From Isurus oxyrinchus (taxonomy: Eukaryota): 64,000 bases of DNA. Where the stretch lies: contig JANJGN010000017.1 of the NCBI GenBank assembly GCA_026770705.1, forward strand, positions 77,748,001 through 77,812,000, written 5' to 3'. The notes under the pieces are model-generated. The model was not told where the DNA came from. It saw only the letters and a program-made list of their open reading frames with translations, and ran no database searches. Each line of letters opens with the position of its first letter. Position 1 is the stretch's first letter. This document shows positions 20,269 to 56,840 of the stretch, piece by piece. Made by a program: the position numbers and the translations under genes.

Positions 20269-23200
20269 GGCCTGAATTTTTAACTCGGCAGGCGGGCACA
20301 ATTGGCAGGCCTGGGATCAGCCAGGAAATGGACCACTGACCGCGATTTCACACTGGCTGGCCAGGGTGGGGGCGGGAAGAGGGCAAAGAATGACATCAAG
20401 GCGGGCGAGGTTGAGCACTGAGAGAAATCTCCCTGAAGGCATGGAGCTTATAACCATCAAATAAAGTTTCAAAAATCCGGAAAAAAATGTCCCAGCATCA
20501 GAATCAGGCAAATGAAAGTATAGATGATAAAAATGCAGTCCACAGATTTTTATTTTTATTTTATTTCCTAACAGAAACCACATCCCACCCTTGGATGAGG
20601 TTTCATGAAAAATGTAAAGGCTATCTGGCCAATTTGCCCGTCCACCAACCATAAGGTTGGATGGACCATGAAAAATCAGAGTCAATTTTTCCATTAATGG
20701 GCTTAATTCCCTCTTAATTGTCGGCAGGCACGCTTCCAACTTTTGCGCACACCTACCGACCGGAATATCACACGAGATTGGGATAACGTTGGGACGCTCG
20801 CCCAATGTCATCTTGCCGGATTCCATGTCCGGTGCAGGAAATGCGGCCGGGTATGCGGGAGCATCTTGGGGGAGATATATGAGATTATGCTTGGCTTGGT
20901 CTCCGTAGTGGAGGAGTGTACTCCGACAATCATCGAAGCAATAAGCCACATGTCCGAGCACCATGCGTCCTCCATGGACAGAGTGACGACTCTTGTGGAG
21001 AGGCTCCTCCAAGAGAGCAGCCGGGGCTTCCTGGGGAAGCGCTCTGACCAGCAAGCCCTCACATCGGCATTGACCTCAGCAATTTTCCCAACTCGGTGCC
21101 CATCCACCCACGGTGAGCAGGGAGGTCCGAAGCAACTTCACATCGTCATAGCAGCTGCCTGCCATCTCTGCGGGCACCTCTCAGGATGCTCCGGTTCAGA
21201 GCAGCAGCTCCTCTGCCCCTCTCTCAGTGACCGTAGAATACAGTAAGGCTGCGACGACTGAGGAGATGCCAGATGCGGAACTAGCAGATCCCTCCTAGGC
21301 GGGGCCAGCACAGGGTCCATTGGCCAGACGACGACCGCCAAGGTCATCAAGGCCAACAGGACAGCAGAGTCAGCAGGTTGTCTCAGATGCCACTCCCAGC
21401 GATGGGGCAGTGTCAAGATGTAGCACCCAGAAACATAAACATAAGGCACCCAAGGCGCACTATTACTGGTGCTTTTGTGTTGGGCCGAGATGAGGTCTTT
21501 ATGATTTGCTTTGAATTGGAACACTATTATCATTTTTTTGGCTTAAGTTTCTTTGCTTGTGATATTAAATTCAGACATGTGACCTTGGCTGAGGGTGCTT
21601 CTTTCCTTCTGCATGTGTACGGGTTCCAAAAATGTTAGGAGTGCTTTGTGGGAATTCAGCTTTATTAACAAGCCCTTAGTTACTGTTCCTAACTTGGAAG
21701 ATTTGGCACTTAGGTATCAAGTATGGAGCCTACAGCTCAGGCTTGTCCTGGAGGCCCATCTGTGGTGTGCTAGTTGAAGGTTCTTTGGATTTGGAATGTT
21801 CTGTGGCGTCCCTGCCTCCCTGCAGTATTCTTGGGTCAGCGTCTTTGCCCTCAGCATTTCCTTGTGCATGCTTATCCTCAGACTCACTGCTGGACTCTTC
21901 ATGTGCAGTCGCAGCCACTGTATCGATGTCTTCATCATCCACTGCATCCCCCCTTTCCAGTGCAAGATTGTGGAGAGCGCGGCGTGCAACAACTATCACT
22001 GAGACATGAACTAGGAGGTTCTGGAGTGTGTCCCCTGAGGGGTCCAGGCATCGGAAGGGCATCTTGAGAAGACCGATGGTTCTCTCCATCACAGCCCTTG
22101 TGGAGGCATGACTCCTATCGTACTGCTGCTCAGCTTGTACTCTTGGATGGCGGAGAGGTATGATGAGCCACCTTCTGAGGGGATAGCCCTTGTGACCCAG
22201 CAGCCATCCATCAAGTCGGGCTGGAGCACTGAACAGCCCCCGCACCTGGGAGTGTCTGAGGATATAGGTGTCATGGGAGCTGCCTGGGTACCTTGCACAG
22301 ACTTGTAGAAGCTGCATCCTGTGGTCACACACTATCTACACATTCATGGAGTGGAAGCCCTTCCTGTTGATGGAGGCACCAGGCTCACCTGCTGGCGCCT
22401 TGATGGCCTCGTGTGTATAGTCTATTGCACCCTGGACACGGGGGAAGCCAGCAATGGCCACAATGCCTCTGGCTCACTGTGTCTGGCTTGCCTGGTCCCA
22501 ACAGAAGTGGGTGAAGGTCAATGCATGCCTAAACAGAACGTCTGTAACCTGCTTGACACAAGTGTGGATAGCTGATTGGGAGACACCTCAAAGATCACCC
22601 ACCGACCCCTAAAAGGAGCCAGACGCATAGAAGTTGAGGGCAGCAGTGACCTTCAGAGCCATTGGCATGGGGTGTCCACCCACACAGTGAGCGGAGATCT
22701 CAGGCCCAGTCATCTGACTGATATAGTTGACTATCTCCTTTGAGAGACGGAGCCTCCTTTGTGACTGCACTCCTGACGTATTGAGGTAGCTGCTTCGTTT
22801 CCTGTATACCCTGCCACGATAGTCGCGTCTTCTGCGGCCCCTTCTGCCTTGGTCTACCTCTTGGCCCTGCGCCTCTTGTGCCTGCGCCTTTCTTCCTAAA
22901 TGTGGCTACCTTGGAGGTTGAATGTGCACTCCTGGCCTCCTCCCCCTTCTAGTCCTCCCTTCCTCCTCAAAGGAGGTGCCTTCAGTGGACAGTTCAGCTC
23001 CCATTCCCAGGCTAAGGGAAGGCTTCTTGAAACCTGCAGGCCCAAAAAAGATTCCTCACTGCAGAGTGCTGACCTGAAGTTTAAGAGTCCAGACAAAACA
23101 GCTGGTATGTGTTTTGAAGTATTGCAGATCACACAGGCAAAGATATTTTTCAATATCTTTGAAAAATCAATACTTGAGAGAGCACACTCGCGACCCCACA

Positions 23201-30003: not shown

Positions 30004-30225
30004 GAATACAAAGTGTCCAGCTTTGAACAAAGACTTATGAATGAAATTGAATTTCGCTTGGAGAGAACTCCTGTCGATGAATCTGATGATGAAATACAAC
30101 ATGAGGATATTCCTACAGGGAAGTGCATTGCACCGATCTTTGATAAGAAACTCAAACATTTCCGAGTGGTTGAAGGATCACCAGTAACAATGAGCTGCAA
30201 ACTTTTAGGGATACCAGTGCCAAAA
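30004..30225 (+). CDS. MYPN: Myopalladin coding exon, start of Ig3 (EYKVSSFEQRLMNEIEFRLERTPVDESDDEIQ...GIPVPK)
   Basis: Acceptor ttttag|gaa and donor aaa|gtaagc; 222 nt. SSFEQRLMNEIEFRLERTPVDESDDEIQH is MYPN-type rather than palladin-type. Confidence 0.96.
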
Positions 30226-30388
30226 GTAAGCTTTGTATTATCTGTGATATTATTTGTGGGACCCAGTTCCCACAATGCTTGTGAGAGTTAATCATTATTA
30301 TCTAAATATTTCATTTATTCTACGTGAATATATACTTGCTGCAAAACAATCACATCAGTTTACAATAACTTACAATTTATACTTCAAG

Positions 30389-30538
30389 GTATACTGGTTT
30401 AAAGATGGTAAACAAATTTCCAAGAAGAATGAACATTTTAAGATGAAGCGCGATGGCGATGGTGCATGTTCATTGCATATTGAATCAGCCACTAATGATG
30501 ATGACGGCAACTACACAGTTATGGCAGTAAATCCCCAG
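30389..30538 (+). CDS. MYPN: Myopalladin coding exon, Ig3 core (VYWFKDGKQISKKNEH...DDDGNYTVMAVNPQ)
   Basis: Acceptor ttcaag|gta and donor cag|gtgagc; 150 nt; I-set Ig motifs WFKDG and DDGNYT. Confidence 0.96.
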
Positions 30539-33085
30539 GTGAGCACCAAAATCTTTAATTGGAATGTGTGATTTGTCAGCTCATCTTCTGTTTCCATTGC
30601 AACCTGTATCATTATATGATTACAGGATGCACAATTTTTATGGAAATGAAACTGTGAATTGCGATTGTTCAAATAGTAAAGTACATCTGAAGGGAGGGTG
30701 TGCTATTTTTCTGCTCTCTCATCATCATACGCCCATTATGTAGTTATACTCTGAGGCCATTCGCCTCCTGAGCCTGTTCCAGCATTCAGTGAGATCATGG
30801 CTAATCTGCGGCCTAACTCCATCTTGACCATCTTTTGCCCGATATCTCTTAATATCTTGGGTTAATCTTTTATTTTTCCCTCTATCACTTCTTAATAGAT
30901 TAAATGTTTGCCAATAATTTGTTGCTAAGGCACAAGCCCTCTCCATAAGGCTTCAAGGCATTTCCAGTGACGAAGGAGTATGGATGAATCATATAGACAT
31001 ATCACCAATACTAGCAGATACACAAGTTTTTCTATGGGTGGAATCTTCGCAGATTTGCATTAAGTGCGGTAGCGGGTGTGAAAAAAGATGTTTTACCTGC
31101 CGGCCACAATGGCAGGTTTTTGCACCATATCGCCCCCTTCCTGCCTCATAAATTATGCAGTCACGGGAAACACACTAGATCGCAGGCGGGCGGCTTCCGA
31201 TTTGCCTGCCTCACCGTTACCTCGCTGCTTCCTCACACTGGGCGCCATATTTAAACTGCAACCGCCTGTACACTTCTCAATGCTTGCAACTCAGGACTCC
31301 TCTGGTGAAGACATGGCACCAAAAGCCAAGAAGAGTGAGCCCCCCGATTCAGTGACACATCCCTGGGAAGCCTGCCGGACGCTGTGGAGGCCCACTGCGA
31401 TGTCCTCTGCTCCTGTTCTGCCACAGGAAGCCCATAAGTCTCAGCACTCCAGCTTGGGAGGCAGAGGCAGAAGTGGTCAGTGCCAACACTGCACACAAGG
31501 GTTCAGCCATCCAGTACAGAAAACAGATGAATGATCACATCCGTGCCGCCTGGGTAAGTCAGCCATCTCATCGATCTCAACTCACCCACTCACAAGCCTA
31601 TCACATATTCACTGGCATCTCACTCACTGCCAGTTCAAGGGACATCACCACTTACTCTCTCTCACTTACCCTCACATCTCCAACTGGCCTCATTTCCTCT
31701 GGACACTGCCTCCTCATCCTGTCCATGGCTCCACTCAGCACACATGCACTCCTGGCATCCCTCTCACTTAGCCTGCAATGCACCTTCATCATACTCACTC
31801 CATCTGTCTTTATGCAGGACTAAGATTGTGCATAATCAACAGGAGAGGTCCCAGACCAAGGATGGAGTGCCAGAATCAAGGTCCTCACTCCATTCGAGAG
31901 TTGTGCATTGGAGCTAGTCAGAGAGGACGTGGATTGTTTCTGCGGCGATAGTGAGGTCGGTAGCGAACACCCACATGAGGATTCTGCGCCACATCATCCC
32001 TCTCTCAACACTACTCTGAGTCCATTCTTCTGTGTTCAACACAGCTGCCAAGCAGTAATAATCTCCACTTCCTGTCCTAGGCACATCTGACACATCGCTC
32101 TCAGGCAAACTTGACCTCAGCCCCAGCACTAAGAGTACCTTAGATGAGGATCTAAGGGCAGCACAGTTGAAGACCCATCACAGTACTCACCCATACCCTC
32201 CACCAGTGCAGCGATACACACCTCGGTGCGACCTAGATGCAGAGCAGCCTCGGGCTGTCCCACAGCAGGCAGACGCAGGGACATCCTTGGTCGCCAGCAC
32301 TCTGATGACTGCTGGAGGCAAGGAATCTGCTGAGTCAGATGATGAGTCTCTGGACTCAATCAGTTGGTGGAGCTTCAAAGACAATCACGGGAACATCATG
32401 ATGGGATGCCTAGTGCACTCCATCGATTGCAAGGGACAATGGAGGAGTCCGTTCACCTTCAGTCCGAGGTGATAGCACCAGCATGCCGATACACTGAGGT
32501 CAACCCTGGCAGAATGGTCGCTGCCATGGAGACCTTGGTCCAGGACATCAATCCTGCACTGCTGCCCGGGCTGAGCTCCCATCACTGACACCATAGGTGG
32601 CCTCCAACAGTGTCAACGTGAGAGGGATGTGGGGCAGCTCGATCTCACTTCAGTTTTCCCTTCTCCTCAAGGAGTCAGCTAGGGGCTGTTGGGCACCCAT
32701 GGGGAGGAGGACCAGCAGCTCGATAACCTGGGGCCGTCCACCCAGGTGACTCCAGAAATGTCTGGCTGATCCAATTCCCCCCTTCCTGTGATCCCCGTAG
32801 CTCCAGCGACACAGGTCAAAGAGGATGCAGCTGGTCCACAGCAGGACAACCAAAGCAGGCCGGGGTCCTCCAGAGGACATCCGTCAAGGTCATCATAGAC
32901 AGGGCATCACAGTCAGCAGGCTGCCTCCATCTCCATTGTGAATGTCAGGGGAGCACCAAGATGTAGTGGTATGGTTAGGAAGGTTAAGAAGATGTAACTC
33001 TTTCGAGTACAAACCCGTTTCCATCTGTTTCAGATGAAGTTACATTGTTTCATAGTTTTGCCATTGTGAGATTTGAACTCTTGAT

Positions 33086-34365
33086 AATCTTTTAAATGAA
33101 AACAATTAAACCAAATCAACAAAATTGGGATAAATCAGGCACAGCCCCTAATTCAGGTCAGCTGTAAAACCAAGGACAAAAATTTAAAGGAACCTTACAA
33201 ACTTTAAATCAAAATGTGATTAAAGGGGTCAACAAAAAACCCCAGTCCCCGCGGTGCCCACCGAGCACGGAAGGCCTCGAGAGTGCCAGCAGACACCGTG
33301 TGCTCCCTCTCCAGGGACATCCAGCAGCGAACGTAGCCGCGGAAGAGGGACAAACAATCGGGCGGGACTCCCCTGTCGATCGCCTGCTGCCTGGACCTGT
33401 TAATGGCCAACTTGGCCAGGCCCAGGAGCAGGTTCGCGAGGAGGTCCTCCTCCTTCCCGACCCCCTTCCGCACCGGGTGCCCATAGATCAGGAGCGTGGG
33501 GCTGAAGTGCAAACAAAACATCAATAAAAGGTTTTTCAAATAACTAAAAAGGGAGTGCAGCCTACAACACCCTATGTATACATGGTCCACGGACTCCACA
33601 AGACCGCAAAAAGGGCACGTGTCCTGAGAGTCCGTGAACCTATGCATCCTCTTATTATAGGGGACTGTTGCATGCAACACCCTCCAACCCAGGTCCCCGA
33701 TAAAAAGGGGGAGGACACCTCCGTAGACGGCCTCCCACGGGGTGCCTCCGCCGCCGGACGGCAACAAGGCACGCCAGGGCGTGTCCGGTCGACGGACAAG
33801 GGCGAGAAAATGGAAGGTGTGCAGCAGCAGTCCATACAAAAAGCCCCTCTTTGCCGTGCCAAAAGGCACGGAGGTCATGTCCCCAAGGAGGCTCATATTG
33901 CGGGGCACCAGCACCCGAGGGAGGGTTCGGGGCTTGGAGCCAATGTGGAATTCTGTCCAAATAGGGGAACGTTCGGACGGAAGACCATGGCGCACCCGGG
34001 CCACTTCAAGACCCAAAATAACGTCGGGTCCGAGCACGACCGTTCTCAGGTCTTGGATGGCATCGGCTGCGACCTGGACACTCACAGATGCACGATGCGC
34101 CAACTCCTGCGGGAGCATCCAGCCCAGTCCTCCGCCACCCAGCACGTCCCCGATCCTGGTCACCCCTGCGGCCACAGCCCTCCTCTCCGCCAACCACTGA
34201 AAAGGACGGAGGGGCGGATTCCTGAGCAGCGGCTCTCTGATGATAGCCGCTACTCCTGATGGGGGAGAGCTGCGTCGCGAGGCGACCACTTTCCAGACTT
34301 TGATCAGGTCCTGGTAAAAGACGGGCAAAGCCTGCAAGGAGCCACCCAGGCCCATCTGTTCTATA
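33086..34365 (-). mobile_element. Tx1-clade non-LTR retrotransposon, 5'-truncated (copy 1)
   Basis: Open ORF 33204-34355 with the Tx1 ORF2 C-terminus: GDLGWRVLH, zinc knuckle CPFCG..ESVDH....C, HFSPTLLIYG, DLLANLLLGLAKLAI.RSR. Confidence 0.9.
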
Positions 34366-34489
34366 TGGGGTTACAAACCCAGTACCATAACCACTTGGCT
34401 ATTTAGGCCAAGCTAAAACACGTTTCCATCTGTTTCAGATGAAGTTACATTGTTTTATAGTTTGCCATTGTGAGATTTGAACTCTTGAT

Positions 34490-35804
34490 AATCTTTTAAA
34501 TGAAAACCAAATCAACAAAATTGGGATAAATCAGGCACAGCCCCTAATTCAGGTCAGCTGTAAAACCAAGAACAAAGTTGAAAGGAAACTTACAAACTTT
34601 AAATCAAAATGTGATTAAAGGGGTCAACAAAACACCCCAGTCCCCGCGGTGCCCACCGAGCACGGAAGGCCTCGAGAGTGCCAGCAGACACCGCGTGCTC
34701 CCTCTCCAGGGACATCCAGCAGCGAACGTAGCCGCGGAAGAGGGACAAACAATCGGGCGGGACTCACCCGTCGATCGCCCGCTGCCTGGACCTGTTAATG
34801 GCCAACTTGGCCAGGCCCAGGAGCAGGTTCGTGAGGAGGTCCTCCTCCTTCCCGACCCCCTTCCGCACCGGGTGCCCATAGATCAGGAGCGTGGGGCTGA
34901 AGTGCAAACAAAACATCAATAAAAGGTTTTTCAAATAACTAAAAAGGGAGTGCAGCCTACAACACCCTATGTATACATGGTCCACGGACTCCACAAGACC
35001 GCAAAAAGGGCACGTGTCCTGAGAGTCCGTGAACCTATGCATCCTCTTATTATAGGGGACTGCTGCATGCAACACCCTCCAACCCAGGTCCCCGATAGAA
35101 AGGGGGAGGACACCTCCGTAGAGGGCCTCCCATCGGGGGCCTCCGCCGCCGGACGGCAACAAGGCACGCCAGGGCGTGTCCGGGCGGCGGACAAGGGCGA
35201 GAAAATGGAAGGTGTGCAGCAGCAGTCCGTACAAAAAGCCCCTCTTTGCTGTGCCAAAAGGCACGGAGGGCATGTCCCCAAGGCGCCTCATTTTGTGGGG
35301 CACCAGCACCCGAGGGAGGGTTCGGGGCTTGGGGCCAATGTGGAATTCTGTCTGAACAGGGGAACGTTCAGATGGAAGACCACCGCGCACCTGGGCCACC
35401 TCAAGACCCAAAATAACGTCGGGTCCGAGCATGACCGTTCTCAGGTCTTGGATGGCATTGGCTGCGACCTGGACACTCACAGACACACATCGCGCCAACA
35501 CCTGCGGGAGCATCCAGCCCAATCCTCCGCCACCCAGCACATCCTTGATCCTGGTCACCCCTGCGGCCACAGCCCTCCTCTCCGCCAACCACTGAAAAGG
35601 ACGGAGGGGCGGATTCCTGAGCAGCGGCTCTCTGACGATAGCCGCTACTCCTGACGGAGGAGAGCTGTGTTGCGAGGCGACCACTTTCCAGACTTTGATC
35701 AGGTCCTGGTAAAAGACGGGCAACACCTGCAAGGAGCCACCGAGGCCCAGCTGTTCTATAAACAGGAGCTGCACGTCATAATTCAGACCGTGCATCTGAC
35801 GGAA
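34490..35804 (-). mobile_element. Tx1-clade non-LTR retrotransposon, 5'-truncated (copy 2)
   Basis: ORF 34764-35795 ends at a premature TGA. Same family and same 3' junction as copy 1. Confidence 0.9.
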
Positions 35805-38800
35805 TAAGAAGATGTAACTCTTTCGAGTACAATCACATTTCCATCTGTTCCTATTCAGATGAAGTTACATTGTTGCATAGTTTGCCATTGTGAGATTTGA
35901 ACTCTTGATCTTGAGGTTACAAACCCAGGACCATAACCACTTGGCTATTTAGGCCAAGCACTCTTTCGAGTACAAATCCCTTTCAATCTGTTTCAGATGA
36001 AGTTACATTGTTTCATAGTTTGCCATTGTGAGATTTGAACTCTTGATCTTAGGATTACAAGTCTAGTACCATAACCACTTGGCTATTTAGGCCAAGCGTT
36101 AAGAAGATGTAACTCTTTCGAGTACAAAACCGTTTCAATCTGTTTCAGATGAAGTTACATTGTTGCATAGTTTGCCATTGTGAGATTTGAACTCTTGATC
36201 TTGGGGTTACAAACCCAGTACCATAACCACTTGGCTATTTAGGCCAAGCGTTAAGATGATGTAACTCTTTCGAGTACAAACCCGTTTCCATCTGTTTCAG
36301 ATGAAGTTACATTGTTTCATAGTTTGCCATTGTGAAATTTGAACTCTTGATCTTGGGGTTACAAACCCAGTACCATAACCACTGGCTATTTAGGCCAAGC
36401 ACATGTTTCCATCTGTTCCTATTCAGATGAAGTTACATTGTTTGCTATTGTGAGATTTGAACTCTTGATCTTAGGATTACAAGTCTAGTACCATAACCAC
36501 TTGGCTATATAGGCCAAGCTAGTACCATAACCACTTGGCTATTTAGCCCAAGCGTTAAGAAGATGTAACTCTTTCAAGTACAAACACATTTCCATCTGTT
36601 CCTATTCACATGAAGTTACATTGTTTCATAGTTTGCCATTGTGAGATTTGAACTCTTGATCTTGGGGTTACAAGCCCAGTACCATAACCACTTGGCTATT
36701 TAGAAAGTTGCACAGCCTGGGATTGGGTGTTAATCACTTGTACATGTGTTCACTATTGTAAATAAGCTCCCAGGAATGTCTCCTTGCCCATGACTCCTTG
36801 TTATGATGAGCAGTGTTCGTGTCATTGTGAAATCTTGGTTACTTCACAAGATAAAGGCAGGTGCCTCAGTCCAGGACCACTTCCCTGTGAAGTGTGTAGC
36901 CTTCAGAGCAAAGTGATGGTCCAGCTTCATATTCACTGGACACATCAGTGATGCCTGTACCTTGATGGTGCTTTTCATTGCTGCCAGAATGTCATAGGCA
37001 GGTGTCATAGACTATCATTCTCTCTGAGTGCTCTCAGCACCTTTGAGGTGGGGCTAGCCACCTGTCACCAGTGATTGTGTGCTCCTGAAGGGATCAGGTA
37101 CTGAAGGCTGACAAAATATCAGGTGCATTTAATGCTTCATGGCTGCGTCTCCATGATATGACCCTGATCACAGAGCACAAACGAGCTGCCCTCAACCAAA
37201 CAGGAATCAGAAATTCACTGATGCAAGGTGAGTATGTAAGGACTGTCCTCACTGCATGTCGTCATCCTGCAGCTATGAAGGCCTACAAAGCGCACCTGCC
37301 TCTTCTGGCCAGTGCAATGGCCTCATCACCAGGACCCTCACCTTCAAGAACCTCATCACCGTCATCCCCTTTGACGACTTTCTCATCGGAGGAGACGTGC
37401 AGCGCTTCCATCTCCTCCTTAGCCAGACCCTCTCCCCATTGCAGCACCAAGTTTTGTAGCATGCAGCAAGCTACGATGATGCGGGACACCCCCTGGGGAC
37501 TGTTTTGCAGTGCTTCATCAGACCTGTTGAGGCACCAGAATCTCATTTTCAAGATGCCTATTGTTTGCTGCACGGAAGTCCAGGCTGTGGCATGAGCCTT
37601 ATTTTACTGGCACTCTGCTGCTGCCTGAGGCCGCCACATGGGCGTCACATCCTCTGTGGGTAGCCCTTGTCTCAAGGAGCTAATCCTGAAGCCTCTGTGG
37701 ACCCTGGAATAGGTCAGGGATCTGAGACCTGCTAAGGATATCAGAGTTCATGGATGCTCCCTGGGAAGCATGCGCAGACCTGTGGGATATGTTTGTGGTG
37801 GTCACAAACCAGCTGAACGTTCAGCAAGTGGAAGCCCTTGAAGTTGATGTAGTTGACTGCTTGTTGCCATGGAGTGCCACATGAGTGCAGTCGATGGCAC
37901 CCTGCACCTGTGGAAAACCAGAGATCTGCGCAAATCCCAGCGCTCTTACCTCCTGTTTTTCCTAATCCCAGGCAAAATGCACAAAGCTCTGTGCCTTCAT
38001 GAAGATGGCGCCCATTACCTCCTGGATACACTTGTGGGTGGATGCCTGCGAGATCCCACACATGTCACCTGTGGAGCCCTGGAAGGAGCCACTGGCGTAG
38101 AAATTGAGCGTCGCCGGGAAAAAGCGACTTGGCTGTGCGCACCCACAAATGCAGGGCACCTCTTCCTTGCTGCCCTATGGGCAATGCTCATGAATGCTGC
38201 TCAAGGTTGTGTGCAGTCACCTCCAAGTTCATCTTGAAGTTCAGGTCGCCAGATGCACGCCTTTTAAAGGCAGTCATGAAGCTCACCGTTCTGAAGTCAC
38301 ACCAACGTGGGAGGATGATTCCGGCATGAGGGCACAATAATGAGATGCAAGTACATTAAAATTAAGTTCCCGATGTTGGATGGCGGGAAAAGCCGCCCGC
38401 CATTGACAGGTGGAGTGGACAATGGGAAACTGGTTTAACAATGACATGAAACCTGTTTTTGGCCTTCTCACCATATTTTCTGCTCACGCCTGCCTTGACA
38501 CCTTCCGCCAATGGGACTGGACGATTCCACCCATATTTTTCCCTTTGGCTTCTGGAATAAATTTCAAAGGGGTGTAAATGTCTGGGGGCACATTTTCTTT
38601 CTAAAATACTCTTCCATTTTTTAAAAGAAATCATTCAAATGCACTAATAATCTCCTGGAGGTCCAGCATTTCCAGGTCACTTTGTGAAATCCCCAGCACA
38701 TGTGTGCCTCAAGGCTGCTCCATTGCCTGCAGTCACAAATATGACTTTGCAGTAGCCTGAGAACCAATCTGGAAATGCCTAACTGCAGAGAACATCATAT

Positions 38801-41464: not shown

Positions 41465-44180
41465 TGGGGAGGCGATGGGGTAGTGGTATTATCTCTGGAC
41501 TAGTAATCCAGAGACCCAGGGTTAATGCTCTGGGGGCCTGGGTTCAAATCCAACCATGGCAGATGGAATCAATACAAATCTGGAATTAAAAGTCTAACAA
41601 TTGTTAATTGTTATAAATTTCCATCTGGTTCACTACAAAGGAAATCTACTGGCCTACATGTGACTCCAGAATAGGCAGGGTCCTGCCCTACCAGCAGAAC
41701 AGACCCAACAGAAGAGGTGACACAGTGATATACAGTTGGGAGGGAGTTGCCTTGGGTGTCTTGTCAAACCTGGACCCCATGAAGTCTCATGGCATCAGGT
41801 CAAACATGTGCAAGGAAACCATGGGCTGATTACTAGGAACCGACACCCCCTCAGCTGATGAATCAGTGCTGATTCACTGATGGTGGCAAGGGCCTTGTAC
41901 CTTGGGTAGGGGAGTGGCTCGGTAGCATCACTACTGACTGAGCTGGCTGAGTCCCAGTCCTAAAGGACATGGTTGCTGGACTGGGTCTGTGGCAAGTGGT
42001 AAGGGAACCAACAAAAAAGGAGAAACATACTTCACCTCATCCTCACCATTTTCTGCAGATGCATCTGTCCATAACAATATCGGTAGGCATGGACCTGGTC
42101 CCGAGTCCTGCCTGAGGATGCCCTCCATCATGTTCTGTGGCACTACCATTGTGCCAAATGGGATAAATTTGGAACAGATCTAGCAACCCAATCCATCAAC
42201 AGCAGCAAAATTCCAATCAAACACAATCCGTAACCTCATGGCCCAGCATATCCCCCACTCTGCCATTACCACCAAGCCAGGGGATCAATTCTGGTTCAAT
42301 GAAGAGTGCAGGACGGCATGCCAGGAGCAGCACCAGGCATACCTAAAAATGAGGTGTCAACCTGATGAAGATACAACACAGGACTACATGCGTAAATAGC
42401 AAATGATAGACAGAGCTAAGCAATCCCACAACCAACGGATCTAAGCTCTGCAGTCATGCACATCCAACCATGAATAGTTGTGAACAATTAAACAACTCAC
42501 TGGAGGAGGAGGCTCCACAAACATCCCCATCCTCAATGATGGGGGAGCCCAGCACAGCAGTGCAAAAGGCTGAAGCATTTGCTACAATTTTTAGCTAGAA
42601 GTGCCCAGTGGACAATCCATCTCAGCCTCCTCTTCAGATGCCAGTTTTTAGCCAATTCTGTTCATTCCACGTGATATCAAGAAACGGCTCAAGGCACTGG
42701 ATAGTGCAAAGGCTATGGGCCCTGACAATATTCTGGCAATAGTACTGAAGACTTGTGCTCCAGAAATTGCCACACCCCTAGCCAAGCTGTTCCAGTCTAG
42801 CTACAACAGTGGCATATACCCAGCCATGTGGAAAATTGCCCAGGTATGTGCTGAACACAAAAAGCAGGACAAATCCAACCCGGCCACTTACTACCCCATC
42901 AGACAACTCTCGATCATCAGTAAAGTAATGGAAGGGGTCATCAACAGTGCTATCAAGTGGCACTTGCTTAGAAATAACCTGCTTACTGATGCCCAGTTTG
43001 GGTTCCACCAGGGCCACTCAGCTCCTGACCTCGTTATAGACTTGATTCAAACATGGACAAAAGAGCTGAACTCCCGAGGTGAGATGAGAGTGACTGCCCT
43101 TGACACCAAGGCTACATCTGGATGAATGTGGCATCAAGGAGCCATAGCAAAACTGGAGTCAATGGGAATCAGGGGGAAAACACTCATTCATACCTAGCAC
43201 AAAGGAAGGTGGTTGTGGTTGTTGGAGGTCAGTCAGCTCAGCTCCAGGACATCACTGCAGGAGTTCCTCAGAGTATTGTCCTCAGCCCAACCATCTTCAG
43301 CTGCTTTATCAATGACCTTCCTTCTATCATAAGGTCAGAAGTGCGGATATGCACTGATGATTTCACTATTTGCGACTCCTCAGATACTGAAACAGTCCAT
43401 GTCCAAATGCGGCAAGACCTGGGCAACATCCAGGCTTGGGCTGACATGTGGCAAGTATCATTTGTGCCACACAAGTACCAGGCAATGACCATCTCCAGCA
43501 CGAGAGAATCTAACCATTGCCCCTTGATGATTATCCTGGGGGTTAGCATTGACCAGAAACTGAACTGGAATAGCTATATAAATACTGGCTACAAGAGCAG
43601 GTCAGAGGCTAGGAATCCTGCGACAAGTAACTTATCTCCTGACTCTCCAAAGCCTGTCCATCATCTTCAAGGCATAAGTCAGGAGTGTCTTGGAATACTC
43701 CCCATTTGTGGATGAATGCAGCTCCCACAACACTGAAGGAGCTGGACCGTCCAGGACAAAGTAGCATGCTTAATTGGCACCACATCCACAAACATTCACT
43801 CCCTCCAGTACCAACACACAGTAGCAGCAGTGAGTACCATCTAGAAGAATTCACCAAGGCTTGTTAGACAGCACCTTCCAAACCCATGACCACTGCCATC
43901 TAGAAGGACAAGGGCAGCGATAGATGGGAACACCACCACGTGGAGGTTCCCCTCCAAGTTACCATTCTGACTTGGAAATATATAGCCGTTCCTTCATTGT
44001 CGCTGGATCAAAATCCTGGAACTCCCTTCCTAACAGCACTATGGGTGTACCAACACCACATGGACTACAACAATTTAAGAAGGCAGCTCACCACCACCTT
44101 CTGAAGGACAGCTAGAGATGGGCAATAAATGCTGACCCAGCCAGCAAAGCCCACATCCTGCGAATGAATAAAGAAAAAAT
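41465..44180 (+). mobile_element. tRNA-headed CR1-group LINE derivative (EN and RT remnants)
   Basis: Head with A- and B-boxes (tggggtagtgg...ggttcaaatcc). RT pieces GPDNI..VLK.CAPE, QFGFHQGHS, GVPQS..LSP..F..FINDLP. 3' tail gggcaataaatgctg...gaataaagaaaaaa. Confidence 0.82.
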
Positions 44181-49790: not shown

Positions 49791-51718
49791 ACTCCAGGCC
49801 CCAAACCCTAGTCTCTCAGCCTCACTTTCTCTTCAGGCCTCAGATTTTCCACCAGCCTTGACCTCACTCTTTCCCCTCGGCCTCAATCTCTCCCTACGGC
49901 ACCAGTCCCAAGCTCTCCTCCCCCCACCCCCAGACTCGGTCCCACTCTCCATCCCATCCAGTGATAGTGACTTACAGAGGGGAGGTGGCACCTTGAGCTT
50001 GGCCCATCACAGGAAGGAACTCTACAGGCTGCATCTGAGCTACTGCAACAACCAATCACAAAGCGATTTAAAGGCAGCTGGCTTTGCTTCAAGCATTGCT
50101 GAATGCATCATTCATGTGCATGTTTCTTAGATATGGTCATGTGATAATTAGTCCTTTCTATTGAGGTTTGTCAGTGAAGAAATGTCTTGGGGACTGTATT
50201 GTTACAGTTCTGTTATCTATTCTGCCTATGCCCTGGGGAACTTGAATTGTCTTCCATTCAAGTATATCTCTCAAATTGCTGCTAATAATACTTGGTGAAT
50301 TAGACAAGGAGGCTGTTGTGTCATAGAATAAAGCATTTACAAGTTCCTGAAACTGCGGTAGATAGCATACTAGATCACAGCCACTACAGCCTATAGCAGG
50401 ATCTAGCAGTGTAAACATGAATGCAATCCTCACTTTTATTACCACAGTTAAAACAGTTCTATTGGTTGACGGTGTGTCCAGACCTGGATGTAGAAGATAG
50501 TGACTGCATCTTTGTTAATGGCCCAGATTTTCCATTCCCAATTGCAGTGCATGCTGAGACGTTCAGCACTATTGAAGGCTACAGTGGCACTGTAACTTGC
50601 AGCGATCTCACTTGTGCCAAGATATGGAAATTGTGGTGTGTCTCAATGGGCTCTGGATGAGTGTAAGCTACACAATGCATGTATAACACACTGGATCATC
50701 TGGGACTTATAAAAACTCGATGATCTCATTTGATGTCAGTTGAATGCTTGTGAGTACTTTGAAGGCAGTTAAATATTGCTAAATGATAACAAAAGATGTT
50801 GTTTGAGCACTGTATGATTTCATTTGATGTCAATTGATAATTAATGTCAGCTGACCGCTATTTGATTACATGGGATGTCAAATGATGGCTAAACGATGAC
50901 TTTTGAGTGCAGATTATGTCAAATGATGGTTAAATGACACTTTGGAGCGCAGACAATCGCAAGTGAATACATATGATGCCTGTTGCATGCAAATGATGTC
51001 AACATTTTCTGGTAGGGATATGTCTAAAGGAAAGTCTGTTGCTTTACTTAAAAGACCTTACCTTGGTCTAAGCAGTGAGGCTTGTGTGAACTTCTGCACT
51101 TTTTGCATTAAAGGTCATAATAAGGTCTTGCTTAATTTTGTTATTGGATAATTTCAATTAACATGAGCATAAAGAGTGAATATTATGGGCCAAATAACTG
51201 TGTCTTGGTTTTAAAAACTGTTTTGGTAGAATTGCAAGCATCTGTTTCTATACCATGCAGATCAACTGTTATACAAATAGCACCAATTGACTTTGTTCCC
51301 TACCTTCCTTGAGTGTGATTAACTGCACTTAAGTGGAAATAAATATGGTAACAATCTATCCCTGTCTTACACCAGTTGCAAATGTTTTCACTTGGTCAAT
51401 GTGCTGAACTTTATATGTGGATACAAGGCATTCAGGCAAAATATAATTCCTTTATCTTCAGTCATTCATCTCAAATATTTAATTATTTTCTGCTCCCGTT
51501 GGCCGAAGGATCAAGAGCCAGAGGACACAGATTTAAGGAGATTGGCATAAGAAACATTGGTAACATAAGGAAAACCTTTTTTACTCAGAGAATGGTTAGG
51601 ATCTGGAATGCATTGCCTGAGACTATGATGGAGGCAGATTCAATCGTGGCTTCCAAAAGAGAATTGGATCATTACCTGAAGAGAAAAAATTGCAGGGTTA
51701 CAGGGAAAAGGCAGTTCT

Positions 51719-51857
51719 GGTATGATAGCCAAGTGGTTATGGTACTGTGCTTGTAACCCCAAGATCAAGAGTTCAAATCTCACCATGGCAAATTATGAAA
51801 CAATGTAATTTCATCTGAATAGGAACAGATGGAAATGTGTTTGTACTCAAAAGAGTT
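51719..51857 (+). mobile_element. Solo copy of the tRNA-Thr-derived short element, inserted in a CR1 3' fragment (~51480-51960)
   Basis: Same head and tail as the array units; TSD ttacagggaaaaggcag on both sides (~51698-51714 and ~51857-51873). Confidence 0.88.
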
Positions 51858-52375
51858 ACAGGGAAAAGGCAGGGGGGTGGTACTAGGTGAATTGTTCTTG
51901 CATAGACATGACAGGCCAAAGGCCTCCTCCTCTGCTGTAACCATTCTACAATTCTATTTTTGTTTCTTTTCCTCAATGATCTTGTCACAATTATTTTCTA
52001 ATGCAACTTCTGTGCCATTGGAATGCAAGCAATTACCTAGATGAGAAGTGAAAGGGTAAAGCAGTAACACTACAAAGAAAATGAATAGCTAACTAGAATT
52101 AGAAGCTGAGATACATAATTCAAGAAAGAAATCAGGTTGGCAACATGATGTCCTCTAAATAGAAAGTTAAAATAGGTTAAGTTTCCAATAAATTAAGTTA
52201 CTAAATACATTTCACACTGGCCTAGCAATTCAAAATAACAACTTGGATACAGATGTTTCCTCACTTATTGAATTTGATTGCACATTTCACTGCCTGCATC
52301 TTACCTGAGAAAGAAATCAAATGAATAATATCTAATTGCCCATGGTAATACAATTCGTCATGTATTAAATAACAG

Positions 52376-54989: not shown

Positions 54990-56840
54990 CAACAACCTAT
55001 ATTTATATAGTAACTTTAACATAATACAGCATCCCAAGATGCTTCACCGGATCATTATAACGCAAAATTTGACACTGAGCCACATAAGGTGATATTAGGG
55101 CACATGGCCAAAAGCTTGGCTAAAGAACTAGGTTTGAAGGAACGTCCTGAAGGGAAAAAGAGTAGTAAATTGGAGAGATTTAGGGAGGGAATTCCACACC
55201 TTAGGTACTCGCCGTATGAAGGCCCAGCCATCACTAGTGGAGTGATTAAAATCGGGAATGTTCAGAAGGCCAGAATTAAGTGCAGATACCTCAGAGGCTT
55301 GTGAGGCTAGAGGAGATAAGAAGAGGCAAAGCCATGGAGGGATTTGAAAACAAGGATGAAAATTTTAAAAGCAAGATGTTGCTTGACTGGGAGCCATTGT
55401 AGGTCAGTGAGTAGGTCATTGGGTGATAGGTGAACAGGACTTGTTGTTCGTTAAGGCAGGCTAGCAGCAGAATTCTGGGTGATCTCTGCCTTGGAATAGT
55501 TGAGACTAGAAATAACAGACACAAATGAACTGAGAGGCAGGGGTGAAGCCAGGAAATGTTAAGAAGGTGGAAACAGGCAGTCTTAGTGATGGTGCAATTA
55601 TCTGGTCAGAAGCCCATCTCAGGATCAGATATGACTTCAAAGTTGCCAACACACTGGTTTAGTCTCAGACAATTGCCAGGGAGCGGGATGAAATTGATAG
55701 CTAGAAAACAGAGTTTGGAGGGGGGACTAAAAGCAGTGGCTTCAGTCTTCCTAGTGCTGGATGTTGGATAAGCAGCCTGATAATTTAGCAACAGTGAAGG
55801 AGTTAAGGGAGGCGGTGGTTGAGGCAGAGCTGGGTTTCATCAGCATATGGGTGAAAATTAATGCTGTGCTTTGAGATGATGTCACCAACGGTAGAATGTA
55901 AATGAGAAATATAGGAAGAGGCCAAGGATTGATCCTTGAGGGATACTGGAGGTAACGGTGAAGGAATGGGAAGCGAAGCAATTGCAAGTGATTCTATGGC
56001 TATGATTAGATAGATAACAGGGTCAAATGCTGCAGGCAGGCAAAGAAGGATGAAGAGGGATAGTTTATCTTTGTCACAGTCATATAAGATGTCATTTGTG
56101 ATCTTGATAAGAGCTGTTTTGTAACTGTGACAGGGCAGAAACCAGTTTGAAGGGATTCAAACATGGAGCTCCAGGAAAGGTAGGTGTGAATTTGGGAGGC
56201 TGCAATACATTTGGGAGAGGAAAGGGAGGTTGGAGATGGGATGATAGTTTACAAGGATGGTGGGGTCAAAGGTCTTTTTTTTAGGTGAGGGTGATGGCAG
56301 CAGATTAAGGGAGTTGGGACAATACCTAAAGAGAGAAATGTTAACAACATCCTAACATGGGGACCAGAAAGCAAATTGAATGGTCAGCAGTTTAGTGGAA
56401 ATAGAATGGAGTGAGAAGGAGATGGGTCTTGTGGACAAAATGAGCTTGACAAGGGCATGAGAGATGACAGGAGAGAAGCTGGAAAAAGATGTTGGACGTA
56501 GGCTAGGTCAGGGGTGAACTTTAGAGGAAGTTTGGCCCGTTGGACTAGTGGAAGGGGCAGCTGATTGGCTGGTCTCAATCTCAGTGACAAAGAAGTCCAT
56601 GAGCTCCTTGCACTTATTGTTAGAGGTGAGGATGGAGGAGACAGGGCAGAGCAGTTTAAGAAGATGAGTTGTGGTAGTGAAAATAAGTCAGGGGTATCTT
56701 TGCATTCCTGGATGATCCTGGAATAGTGAACAGCTTTAGCAGAGAAGAGCAGGTGGTATAGTCAATTCTGGAATTGAATAGCTAAACCAGTTGGTCACCA
56801 TATCCTTTCAAGTCTGCATCCCTTGGGTTTAAGAGAGTGG
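54990..56840 (-). mobile_element. Degenerate L2-clade LINE
   Basis: PQGS.LG and H.YAD.TQL remnants on the - strand; 3' end near 54990. Confidence 0.7.

What the first reader, a model, noticed from the sequence alone, without database searches (positions are those of the whole stretch)
32983..36703. Repeat-spacer-like array built by serial retro-insertion at one site: a host 14-mer recurs five times between tRNA-Thr-derived units
Seen: gttaagaagatgta is the last codons (..VKKM*) of the host Harbinger Myb-like ORF at 32983-32996. It recurs at 35805-35816 (partial), 36098-36111, 36250-36263 (one mismatch) and 36554-36567; a possible eroded final copy (agaa-agttgcac) sits at the right flank. The solo element at 51719 lacks this 14-mer, so it is target DNA and not part of the unit. 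Each interval holds 1-3 units. The units mix diagnostic variants in several combinations (tail gtttcag vs gttcctattcag; anticodon arm ttggggttacaaacccag vs ttaggattacaagtctag), and some are 3'-truncated and fused head-to-tail. Inference: repeated target-primed reverse transcription at the same nick, each round re-duplicating the target and often template-jumping between different RNAs. The result is an ordered record of RNA templates, architecturally reminiscent of a CRISPR array but retrotransposon-made.
Basis: partly seen in the sequence, partly recalled or inferred. Interest (0 to 1): 0.85.

Follow-up and report, generated by a model that had tools for sequence, protein, structure and literature searches.

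The report
Retroelement stack at one Harbinger site
A short jumping element (a tRNA-like SINE) and its LINE partner have inserted again and again at one 14-letter site inside an old Harbinger DNA transposon in a shark genome, re-copying that site each time; this kind of stacking has already been described in crocodilians.

Summary
The 14-mer GTTAAGAAGATGTA occurs at 32983, 36098 and 36554 (exact), at 36250 (13/14) and at 35805 (12/14). All retroelements lie on the minus strand.

- Uninserted copies of the Harbinger family carry the 14-mer once, followed directly by GTTGCACAG.
- Dispersed SINE copies end at ...GAGTTACA with random flanks, so they lack the remaining 10 letters of the 14-mer.

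The 14-mer is therefore target DNA, a 14-bp target-site duplication whose last 4 letters match the RNA's 3' end.

The best reading is five retro-insertions at one regenerated site. Four spacer-less junctions look like template jumps: each downstream unit starts exactly at SINE base 1, and each upstream unit is cut short at its 3' end. The first interval holds two 5'-truncated LINE fragments from the L1/Tx1 group. They share the SINE's last 87 bases or so.

Corrections:
- The Harbinger ORF most likely stops 17 nt upstream of the 14-mer (...GSTKM*), not inside it.
- There is no real final copy of the 14-mer at the right edge.
- The kind is already known (Kojima 2015, SINEU/Tx1-Mar in Mariner-N4). 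The CRISPR likeness is only topological.

Other first-stage notes of this scan report the same target on other pieces of this genome. Long-read confirmation and Tx1-clade placement could not be done.

The parts
32727..32966 (+). C-terminal piece of the second ORF of the decayed Harbinger; ends ...GSTKM then TAG at 32964-32966
   Evidence: aligns to the C-end of a distant Harbinger ORF at 21262-21420 (E 6e-8). No Pfam domain.
32983..32996 (+). Native Harbinger 14-mer. On this strand it would be the primer for reverse transcription, with the nick after ...GATGTA.
   Evidence: the empty-site consensus (loose end before 36706).
32997..33083 (-). 3' module of LINE1 that is shared with the SINE (T arm to ...GAGT)
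   Evidence: Alignment.
33084..34360 (-). LINE1 body, 5'-truncated; holds ORF2 C-terminal 383 aa (33204-34355) with zf-RVT
   Evidence: 95.6% identical to LINE2.
34361..34413 (-). Unit h: first 53 nt of the SINE (starts at base 1, ends ...GTAACCCCA), fused to the 5' end of LINE1
34414..35804 (-). LINE2: 5'-truncated LINE with a shortened shared module (...GGAAACGTGTTTTA), abutting base 1 of unit h
   Evidence: 853 raw reads run on past 35804 with one consensus (agreement 0.97), so the LINE family continues 5' of this point.
35805..35816 (+). Partial spacer, 12 of 14 (TAAGAAGATGTA)
35817..35959 (-). Unit g: full SINE, GGG-type arm, long tail
35960..36097 (-). Unit f: SINE ending ...GAGT, joined to base 1 of unit g with no spacer; TAG-type arm, short tail
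36098..36111 (+). Spacer, exact 14-mer
36112..36249 (-). Unit e: full SINE
   Evidence: tRNA model 23.7 bits. 1743 raw reads break off at its base 1 into random flanks.
36250..36263 (+). Spacer, 13 of 14. Raw-read depth here is 2383.
36264..36400 (-). Unit d: full SINE
36401..36519 (-). Unit c: SINE 3'-truncated at ...AACATGT, fused to base 1 of unit d
   Evidence: tRNA model 26.7 bits.
36520..36553 (-). Unit b: first 34 nt of the SINE, fused to base 1 of unit c
36554..36567 (+). Spacer, exact 14-mer
36568..36703 (-). Unit a: SINE lacking its first 7 nt. It is followed by 2 filler bases (36704-36705) and no spacer.
36706..37285 (.). Harbinger right flank; resumes as (A)GTTGCACAG
   Evidence: contigs of other copies align from 36706.
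37286..38064 (-). Decayed PIF/Harbinger transposase remnants
   Evidence: DDE_Tnp_4 29.7 bits, above the 24.8 cut-off.
51715..51855 (+). Solo SINE copy with a 17-bp target-site duplication TTACAGGGAAAAGGCAG (51698-51714 and 51856-51872); no TCTTCTTAAC

Best explanation
A target-preferring non-LTR retrotransposon of the L1/Tx1 group and its tRNA(Thr)-like partner SINE use one site in a Harbinger DNA transposon as a landing pad.

Inferred mechanism. The element's endonuclease nicks the window's + strand after ...AAGATGTA. The last four bases, TGTA, pair with the RNA's 3'-terminal UACA and prime reverse transcription. The other strand is cut 14 nt away, so filling in leaves the 14-mer on both sides of the insert. 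One of the two copies still sits in enough of the original context to be cut again. Repeated rounds therefore build a stack of retro-copies separated by the same 14-mer.

This locus records five such rounds, listed left to right on the + strand:
1. LINE1 + head h + LINE2
2. units g + f
3. unit e
4. units d + c + b
5. unit a

Within three of the rounds the reverse transcriptase, on reaching the 5' end of one RNA, carried on along a second or third RNA. That gives four spacer-less joints: L2|h, f|g, c|d and b|c. A fifth spacer-less joint, h|LINE1, joins two internal positions and may instead be a LINE inserted into a SINE. The last round at the right edge lost the duplicated target.

Shown: the target is native to the Harbinger; the SINE's own ends; the spacer identity; the junction anatomy; and that head-14mer-tail junctions are common genome-wide.

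Inferred: the nick positions, the endonuclease specificity, the order of events, the template jumping, and that this LINE is the driver. No host function is implied.
For: 1. Empty Harbinger copies read ...GGTTAGGAAAGTTAAGAAGATGT|AGTTGCACAG (loose ends before 36706; 53 contigs in X1, 64 in X6). Their left part carries the family's own variants at 32970 and 32972 (table 3).

2. Dispersed SINE copies end at ...GAGTTACA. Loose ends before 36260 (795 reads) and before 36564 (391 reads) have random consensus, agreement 0.33. The same boundary appears in the contigs of X5 and X6. The solo copy's target-site duplication starts TTACA.

3. The SINE 5' end is exact. 1743 reads break at 36249. The tRNA model's position 1 lies 5 nt inside the unit, as expected for a Pol III start. 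All 7 internal heads start at base 1.

4. The three full internal spacers are exactly 14 nt and the fourth keeps 12 of 14.

5. Depth inside the spacer at 36255 is 2383 raw reads, against about 400-1000 on the Harbinger flanks. The odd joints of this particular array have depth 10-94. Such junctions are therefore common in the genome, but this array as a whole is not amplified.

6. Reads from elsewhere show further joints between head base 1 and an internal position: 36249->36624, ->36634 and ->33048.

7. LINE1 abuts the 14-mer with the same tail as the SINE. The LINE has RVT_1 and zf-RVT, its relatives carry an APE-type endonuclease, and the nearest solved structure is human L1 ORF2p.

8. Precedent: tandem SINEU-3 copies sandwiching a 16-bp target-site duplication in Mariner-N4, with Tx1-Mar LINEs sharing the target (PMC4494074).
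Against: - The right edge has no 14-mer, so the expected n+1 copies are not all present. This needs a 5' junction deletion.
- The order and independence of the rounds are not shown, and the unit tree is unresolved.
- Some growth by unequal crossing-over or gene conversion between similar arrays cannot be excluded; units d and e differ by only 3%.
- Many SINE copies lie at other, AT-rich sites, so this is a preference and not strict specificity.
- The h|LINE1 joint lies 4 nt from the start of the LINE/SINE homology. It may be a LINE inserted into a SINE rather than a template jump.
- Tx1-clade membership and the endonuclease of this LINE were not seen, because both copies are 5'-truncated.
- No long read spans the structure in the data I could reach.
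Confidence: 0.7

Rival explanations
1. The 14-mer is simply the element's own 3' end, shared by LINE and SINE. On this view the region is a head-to-tail concatemer or tandem SINE repeat, not re-duplicated target. This was my first reading.
For: Every 14-mer sits directly 3' of a complete tail, and none sits at the 5' edge of the array. LINE and SINE share the tail.
Against: Uninserted Harbinger copies already hold the 14-mer with no SINE sequence beside it. Dispersed SINE copies stop at ...GAGTTACA and lack the other 10 letters. The solo copy lacks them as well.
Confidence: 0.05
2. One or two insertions at the site were followed by unequal crossing-over, slippage or gene conversion within and between arrays. 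That would multiply the unit-plus-14-mer modules and create the fused joints.
For: TRF sees a 152-bp period with 4.9 copies. Units d and e are the same subtype and differ at 4 of 137 positions. Thousands of similar arrays would offer partners for exchange.
Against: Neighbouring units belong to different subtype combinations and differ by 3-11%. The joints are all different. Every spacer-less joint has the downstream unit starting at exactly base 1, which random recombination would not give. A 14-bp repeat is too short for homologous exchange.
Confidence: 0.12
3. A single reverse-transcription event copied a chain of RNAs. Some were read-through transcripts from Harbinger-resident copies and carried the 14-mer at their 3' end, so the internal 14-mers came from RNA rather than from repeated target duplication.
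For: Template jumps clearly occur in this system (spacer-less joints; further joints). Site-specific LINEs are known to use read-through 3' ends (general knowledge of R1/R2; discussed in PMC4494074).
Against: All the full internal spacers stop at exactly 14 nt, with no further Harbinger letters (CTTTCC...). There is no Pol III terminator at that point. Nine jumps in one event is a lot.
Confidence: 0.08
4. The array is an assembly artefact: repeats were collapsed or mis-joined.
For: No contig or read that I could lay spans the stretch.
Against: The units differ by 3-11% and the two LINEs by 4.4%, which is enough for a unique assembly. Private variants of unit d are visible against the family background (36336 and 36382). 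Runs of two organism labels hold 46-65% of the stretch's sampled words.
Confidence: 0.03

Closest known systems
SINEU SINEs and Tx1-Mar LINEs targeting the Mariner-N4_AMi DNA transposon in crocodilians (Kojima 2015, PMC4494074)
   Same: A LINE and SINEs share a preferred site inside an abundant, old DNA transposon. The target-site duplication is long and fixed (16 bp there, 14 bp here). Tandem SINE copies sandwich a target-site duplication and are explained by sequential insertion. RNA-derived sequence is added at the 5' end by template switching. Targeting is partial, not absolute.
   Different: The target here is a PIF/Harbinger, not a Mariner. The SINE head is tRNA-like with a Pol III promoter, not U1/U2. 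The LINE and the SINE share a long 3' module of about 87 nt that includes the tRNA-like T arm. This stack has five rounds and includes LINE fragments. Tx1-clade placement of the LINE was not tested here.
Tx1L inserting into the Tx1D DNA transposon of Xenopus laevis (Christensen et al. 2000, as cited in PMC4494074)
   Same: An APE-type LINE of the L1/Tx1 group is aimed at a defined sequence inside a DNA transposon.
   Different: The host and the target family differ (piggyBac-type there). I did not verify any partner SINE or multi-round stack with these tools.
L1 chimeric retrocopies (U6/L1 and the like) and R2 end-to-end template jumping (Buzdin 2002; Bibillo and Eickbush 2004, as cited in PMC4494074)
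   Same: Two RNAs are joined in one retro-copy without any target DNA between them.
   Different: Here the finished template is complete at its 5' end, and the next RNA is entered at or before its 3' end. The jumps occur inside a site-specific stack.
CRISPR arrays
   Same: Topology only. A staggered cut on both sides of a short sequence duplicates it at each integration, regenerates the site, and can give an ordered series of inserts.
   Different: This is a eukaryote. The copying is RNA-templated and done by a LINE enzyme. There are no cas genes and no leader. The inserts are the parasite itself. There is no evidence of transcription into guides or of any defence function.

Membership tests
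Target-specific LINE/SINE pair of the Tx1 type | Reverse transcriptase falls in the Tx1 clade in a phylogeny with reference elements | not testable with these tools
   Only the C-terminal 383 aa is present here. A 67%-identical relative, P0001, has the end of RVT_1 plus zf-RVT. More distant relatives carry the APE endonuclease domain PF03372. The nearest solved structure is human L1 ORF2p. No source names any hit Tx1, and no reference Tx1 sequences were on hand. The result is L1/Tx1 group only.
Target-specific LINE/SINE pair of the Tx1 type | A given sequence flanks a large share of copies (more than 20% in Kojima 2015) | tested here: met
   For the SINE, raw-read depth inside the spacer at 36255 is 2383, against 795 reads that break into random flanks at that unit's 3' end and 1743 at its 5' end. 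This is rough, because multi-copy reads are placed on the best-matching unit. For the LINE it was not measured; 2 of 2 copies in the window lie in this stack.
Target-specific LINE/SINE pair of the Tx1 type | Uninserted copies of the target exist and carry the site once | tested here: met
   the consensus before 36706 in X1 (53 contigs) and X6 (64 contigs) is the left flank plus one 14-mer.
Target-specific LINE/SINE pair of the Tx1 type | Fixed target-site duplication at the site | tested here: met
   The 14-mer occurs three times exactly, once at 13/14 and once at 12/14. The right edge lacks it.
Target-specific LINE/SINE pair of the Tx1 type | LINE and SINE share their 3' end | tested here: met
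   About 87 nt from CAAGAGTTC to ...GAGT are shared by LINE1, LINE2 and all units. The LINE 3' UTR upstream of that point shows no similarity above shuffles.
tRNA-derived SINE | tRNA-like head with A and B boxes, a defined 5' end, and target-site duplications at dispersed copies | tested here: met
   tRNA model scores of 16-27 bits, below the gathering score. A-box-like TAGCCAAGTGG and B-box-like GAGTTCAAATC were read from the sequence. The 5' end is exact in 1743 reads. The solo copy has a 17-bp target-site duplication.
PIF/Harbinger host element | DDE_Tnp_4 transposase and a second (Myb/SANT-like) ORF | tested here: inconclusive
   Transposase remnant scores 29.7 bits, above the cut-off. The second ORF is recognisable only by its likeness to another Harbinger's ORF end. 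Pfam finds no Myb domain, and the library search gave one weak hit.
CRISPR array | Constant repeats of 20 to about 50 bp with foreign-derived spacers, a leader and cas genes, in a prokaryote | tested here: not met
   This is a vertebrate locus. The constant element is a 14-bp target-site duplication, the inserts are SINE/LINE copies, and there is nothing Cas-like among the ORFs.
Satellite made by unequal crossing-over | Regular period with the same joint in every unit | tested here: not met
   TRF reports period 152 but only 74% matches. The nine joints are of six different kinds.

The most novel reading that the evidence does not exclude
Most copies of this SINE subfamily in the genome may sit in such 14-mer-separated stacks inside about a thousand Harbinger copies. 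If each stack grows at one end only, the stacks would be natural, ordered logs of successive reverse-transcription events at a single nick, template jumps included. The LINE also seems to have taken its 3' recognition module, including the tRNA-like T arm, from the SINE or from a SINE it inserted into. That is the reverse of the usual direction of borrowing.
Probability: 0.25. Interest if true: 0.6.

Novelty: new member of a known kind. Interest (0 to 1): 0.4.

Why it matters
The locus is a clean, multi-round example of how a target-preferring LINE/SINE pair regenerates its own landing site and piles up there. It extends the Tx1D and Mariner-N4 cases to a shark, to a Harbinger target and to a tRNA-headed SINE.

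The stacks have three practical uses:
- Annotation: they are not a satellite and not a new composite SINE.
- Mechanism: many natural examples can show where this reverse transcriptase switches templates.
- Ordering: if growth is polar, SINE subfamilies could be ordered in time.

It does not reveal a new mechanism, and no host function is indicated.

Tried and rejected
1. My first reading, that the 14-mer is the element's own tail, was dropped.

2. I looked for an empty site inside the window. The only other Harbinger (about 20700-22480) belongs to a distant family and does not align at the site. The pattern AAGATGTAGTTGCACAG has no other match.

Two exact-pattern scans of metagenome contigs found nothing.

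4. Naming the LINE clade failed. Two protein searches gave unnamed relatives, or host proteins with an exonised LINE piece. The Atlas says only LINE-1-like.

5. Checking the Harbinger ORF end in the 1.84-billion-protein library gave one weak, repetitive hit.

6. The tree of array units plus the solo copy has all forks under 80% support, so monophyly could not be tested.

7. Likeness between the LINE 3' UTR and the SINE upstream of the shared module is at shuffle level.

8. Rfam at gathering thresholds found nothing in the window.

9. Long-read confirmation was not possible. The served runs were short-read raw data or Logan contigs, none spans the stretch, and read laying is capped at one call.


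Full report
**What is there**

All retroelements in 32983-36703 lie on the minus strand.

Read in element sense, from right to left on the window, the region consists of:
- Harbinger flank ...CTGTGCAACT, then 2 filler bases
- unit a (36703-36568), a SINE lacking its first 7 nt
- 14-mer
- unit b, the first 34 nt of the SINE
- unit c, cut short at ...AACATGT
- unit d, full
- 14-mer with one mismatch
- unit e, full
- 14-mer
- unit f, ending ...GAGT
- unit g, full
- 12 of the 14 letters
- LINE2 (35804-34414), 5'-truncated, its tail cut at ...GTGTTTTA
- unit h, the first 53 nt of the SINE
- LINE1 (34360-32997), 5'-truncated, with a full tail
- 14-mer at 32996-32983
- Harbinger flank

The 14-mer count is far above chance: 6 hits at up to 2 mismatches against 0.6 expected, with none of 100 shuffles reaching 6. 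One of the six, at 55558, is unrelated sequence.

TRF sees a 152-bp period, but with only 74% matches. The units differ pairwise by 3-11%, and LINE1 and LINE2 are 95.6% identical. The two anticodon-arm variants and the two tail variants occur in all four combinations.

**What the units are**

- The Rfam tRNA model hits the heads at 16-27 bits, below the gathering score of 29 (E 0.004-0.04), with anticodon TGT, i.e. Thr. ARAGORN does not call them.
- Model position 1 lies 5 nt inside the unit. The unit's first base is therefore a plausible Pol III start.
- The LINE fragments encode the C-terminal part of an ORF2 with the zf-RVT zinc knuckle.
- A 67%-identical relative, P0001, adds the end of the RT domain. 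More distant relatives carry an APE-type endonuclease domain. The nearest solved structure is human L1 ORF2p.
- The LINE therefore belongs to the L1/Tx1 group. The Tx1 clade itself could not be tested.
- LINE and SINE share the last 87 nt or so, from CAAGAGTTC (in front of the T arm) to ...GAGT. Upstream of that point they are unrelated.
- The host element is a decayed PIF/Harbinger. Its transposase remnant scores 29.7 bits against DDE_Tnp_4.

**Is the 14-mer target or tail?**

I first thought it was the elements' own 3' end, because it always follows a complete tail and is missing at the array's 5' edge. Laying public data on 32300-37300 decided against this. The data were three sets of Logan contigs plus one set of raw Illumina reads.

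1. Contigs from other copies of the Harbinger align to the right flank from 36706. They are preceded by ...GGGTTAGGAAAGTTAAGAAGATGT (53 contigs in X1, 64 in X6). This is the Harbinger left flank, with the family's own variants at 32970 and 32972, plus one 14-mer.

2. Reads from dispersed SINE copies break into random, AT-rich flanks at 36260 (795 reads) and at 36564 (391 reads). In both units the aligned part begins at TGTAAC. Contigs of X5 and X6 show the same boundary. The SINE itself therefore ends ...GAGTTACA, and TCTTCTTAAC is not part of it.

3. 1743 reads break at 36249, so the SINE's 5' end is exact.

4. The solo copy in the window (51715-51855) has a 17-bp target-site duplication that also begins TTACA.

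Together these results make the 14-mer a target-site duplication. Its last four letters, TGTA, can pair with the RNA's terminal UACA.

**How the stack most likely arose**

The steps below are inferred.
- The + strand is nicked after ...GATGTA. The 14-mer's 3' end primes reverse transcription on the tail.
- The second nick lies 14 nt away, so the 14-mer ends up on both sides of the insert.
- One copy remains next to original Harbinger sequence and is used again.

Five rounds account for the five copies.

The spacer-less joints b|c, c|d, f|g and LINE2|h all have the downstream unit starting at exactly base 1. The upstream unit is cut at different 3' positions. At f|g precisely the 14-mer is missing. 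This is what a jump from the 5' end of a finished RNA onto another RNA would give, and random deletion would not.

Reads from elsewhere in the genome show more joints between head base 1 and an internal position: 36249->36624, ->36634 and ->33048.

The right edge has a 5'-truncated unit and no 14-mer. This fits an imprecise 5' junction that removed the target. If the stack grew rightwards, that would have ended its growth. The direction of growth is not resolved.

**How common is it?**

In the raw reads, depth inside the spacer at 36255 is 2383. Harbinger flanks have about 400-1000. The odd joints of this particular array (36520 and 36553) have 10-94.

Head-14mer-tail junctions are therefore very common in the genome, several per Harbinger copy on this rough measure. 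This array as a whole has not been amplified.

Several first-stage notes of this scan describe the same LINE at the same target on other pieces of the genome. They are unchecked leads, and they moved my prior before settled it.

- The reading of the 14-mer as the last codons (VKKM*) of the Myb-like ORF is probably wrong. That frame is open for only 34 codons. Frame 0 is open for 79 codons and ends ...GSTKM* at the TAG at 32964-66. It aligns right up to the stop with the ORF end of a second, distant Harbinger in the window (E 6e-8). The target therefore lies 17-31 nt past the stop.
- The family consensus carries AAGATGTAGTGGCA and AAGATGTAGTTGCA 31 bp apart. This probably caused the confusion.
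- Pfam finds no Myb domain in the pieces.
- The first interval is mainly LINE sequence, not SINE units.
- The eroded final copy is not a copy.

**Comparison with what is known**

Kojima 2015 (PMC4494074) describes crocodilian SINEU elements and Tx1-Mar LINEs. They prefer one site in the Mariner-N4_AMi transposon and make a 16-bp target-site duplication. Tandem SINE copies 'sandwiching a TSD' are explained there by sequential insertion, and 5' additions are ascribed to template switching. The same paper recalls Tx1L in Tx1D of Xenopus.

The present case is a further member of that kind, with a new host, a new target family and a new SINE type. I found no paper on it in sharks.

The CRISPR likeness is topological only. 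In both, a staggered cut re-creates the site.

**Limits**

- Read laying and the look-up of sequencing runs are capped at one call each.
- No long read spans the stretch.
- The unit tree is unresolved.
- Copy-number statements rest on multi-mapped short reads and are ratios, not counts.

Noticed in passing
window 33083/33084 and 34488/34489 (start of LINE/SINE homology); 34360/34361 (h|LINE1 joint): The module shared by LINE and SINE begins in front of the tRNA-like T arm, so the LINE's 3' end holds the 3' third of a tRNA-like fold. Head h stops only 4 nt before that boundary. LINE1 may therefore be a LINE inserted into a resident SINE at a second preferred site rather than a template jump. 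Other notes of the scan suggest such SINE-targeting.
   Followed up: partly
window 32958-32971 and 32989-32996 with 36706-36711: The Harbinger family consensus carries a 13/14 direct repeat, AAGATGTAGT(G/T)GCA, 31 bp apart. The first copy holds the ORF's stop codon and the second holds the nick site. It looks like an old 14-bp duplication flanking 17 bp.
   Followed up: partly
window 34497 joined to 36278 in reads: 327 raw reads join ...GATAATCTTTT to a SINE/LINE tail. That is a widespread form in which the shared 3' module is preceded by another tail (tail-tail) instead of by the LINE UTR or the SINE head.
   Followed up: no
window 20700-22480: A second, distantly related decayed Harbinger lies in the same orientation. 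Its ORF ends ...GSVKM* at 21421-21423. There is no insertion at the corresponding place.
   Followed up: partly
window 41472-41561 (+): ARAGORN calls a 90-nt tRNA-Thr (AGT). By its context it looks like the head of a different SINE family rather than a working tRNA gene.
   Followed up: no
window 30013-30571 (+): Two open stretches read like immunoglobulin I-set exons of a host gene (for example ...WFKDGKQISKKNEHFKMKRDGDG...). If so, the Harbinger and its stack lie in an intron. This was not tested with Pfam.
   Followed up: no
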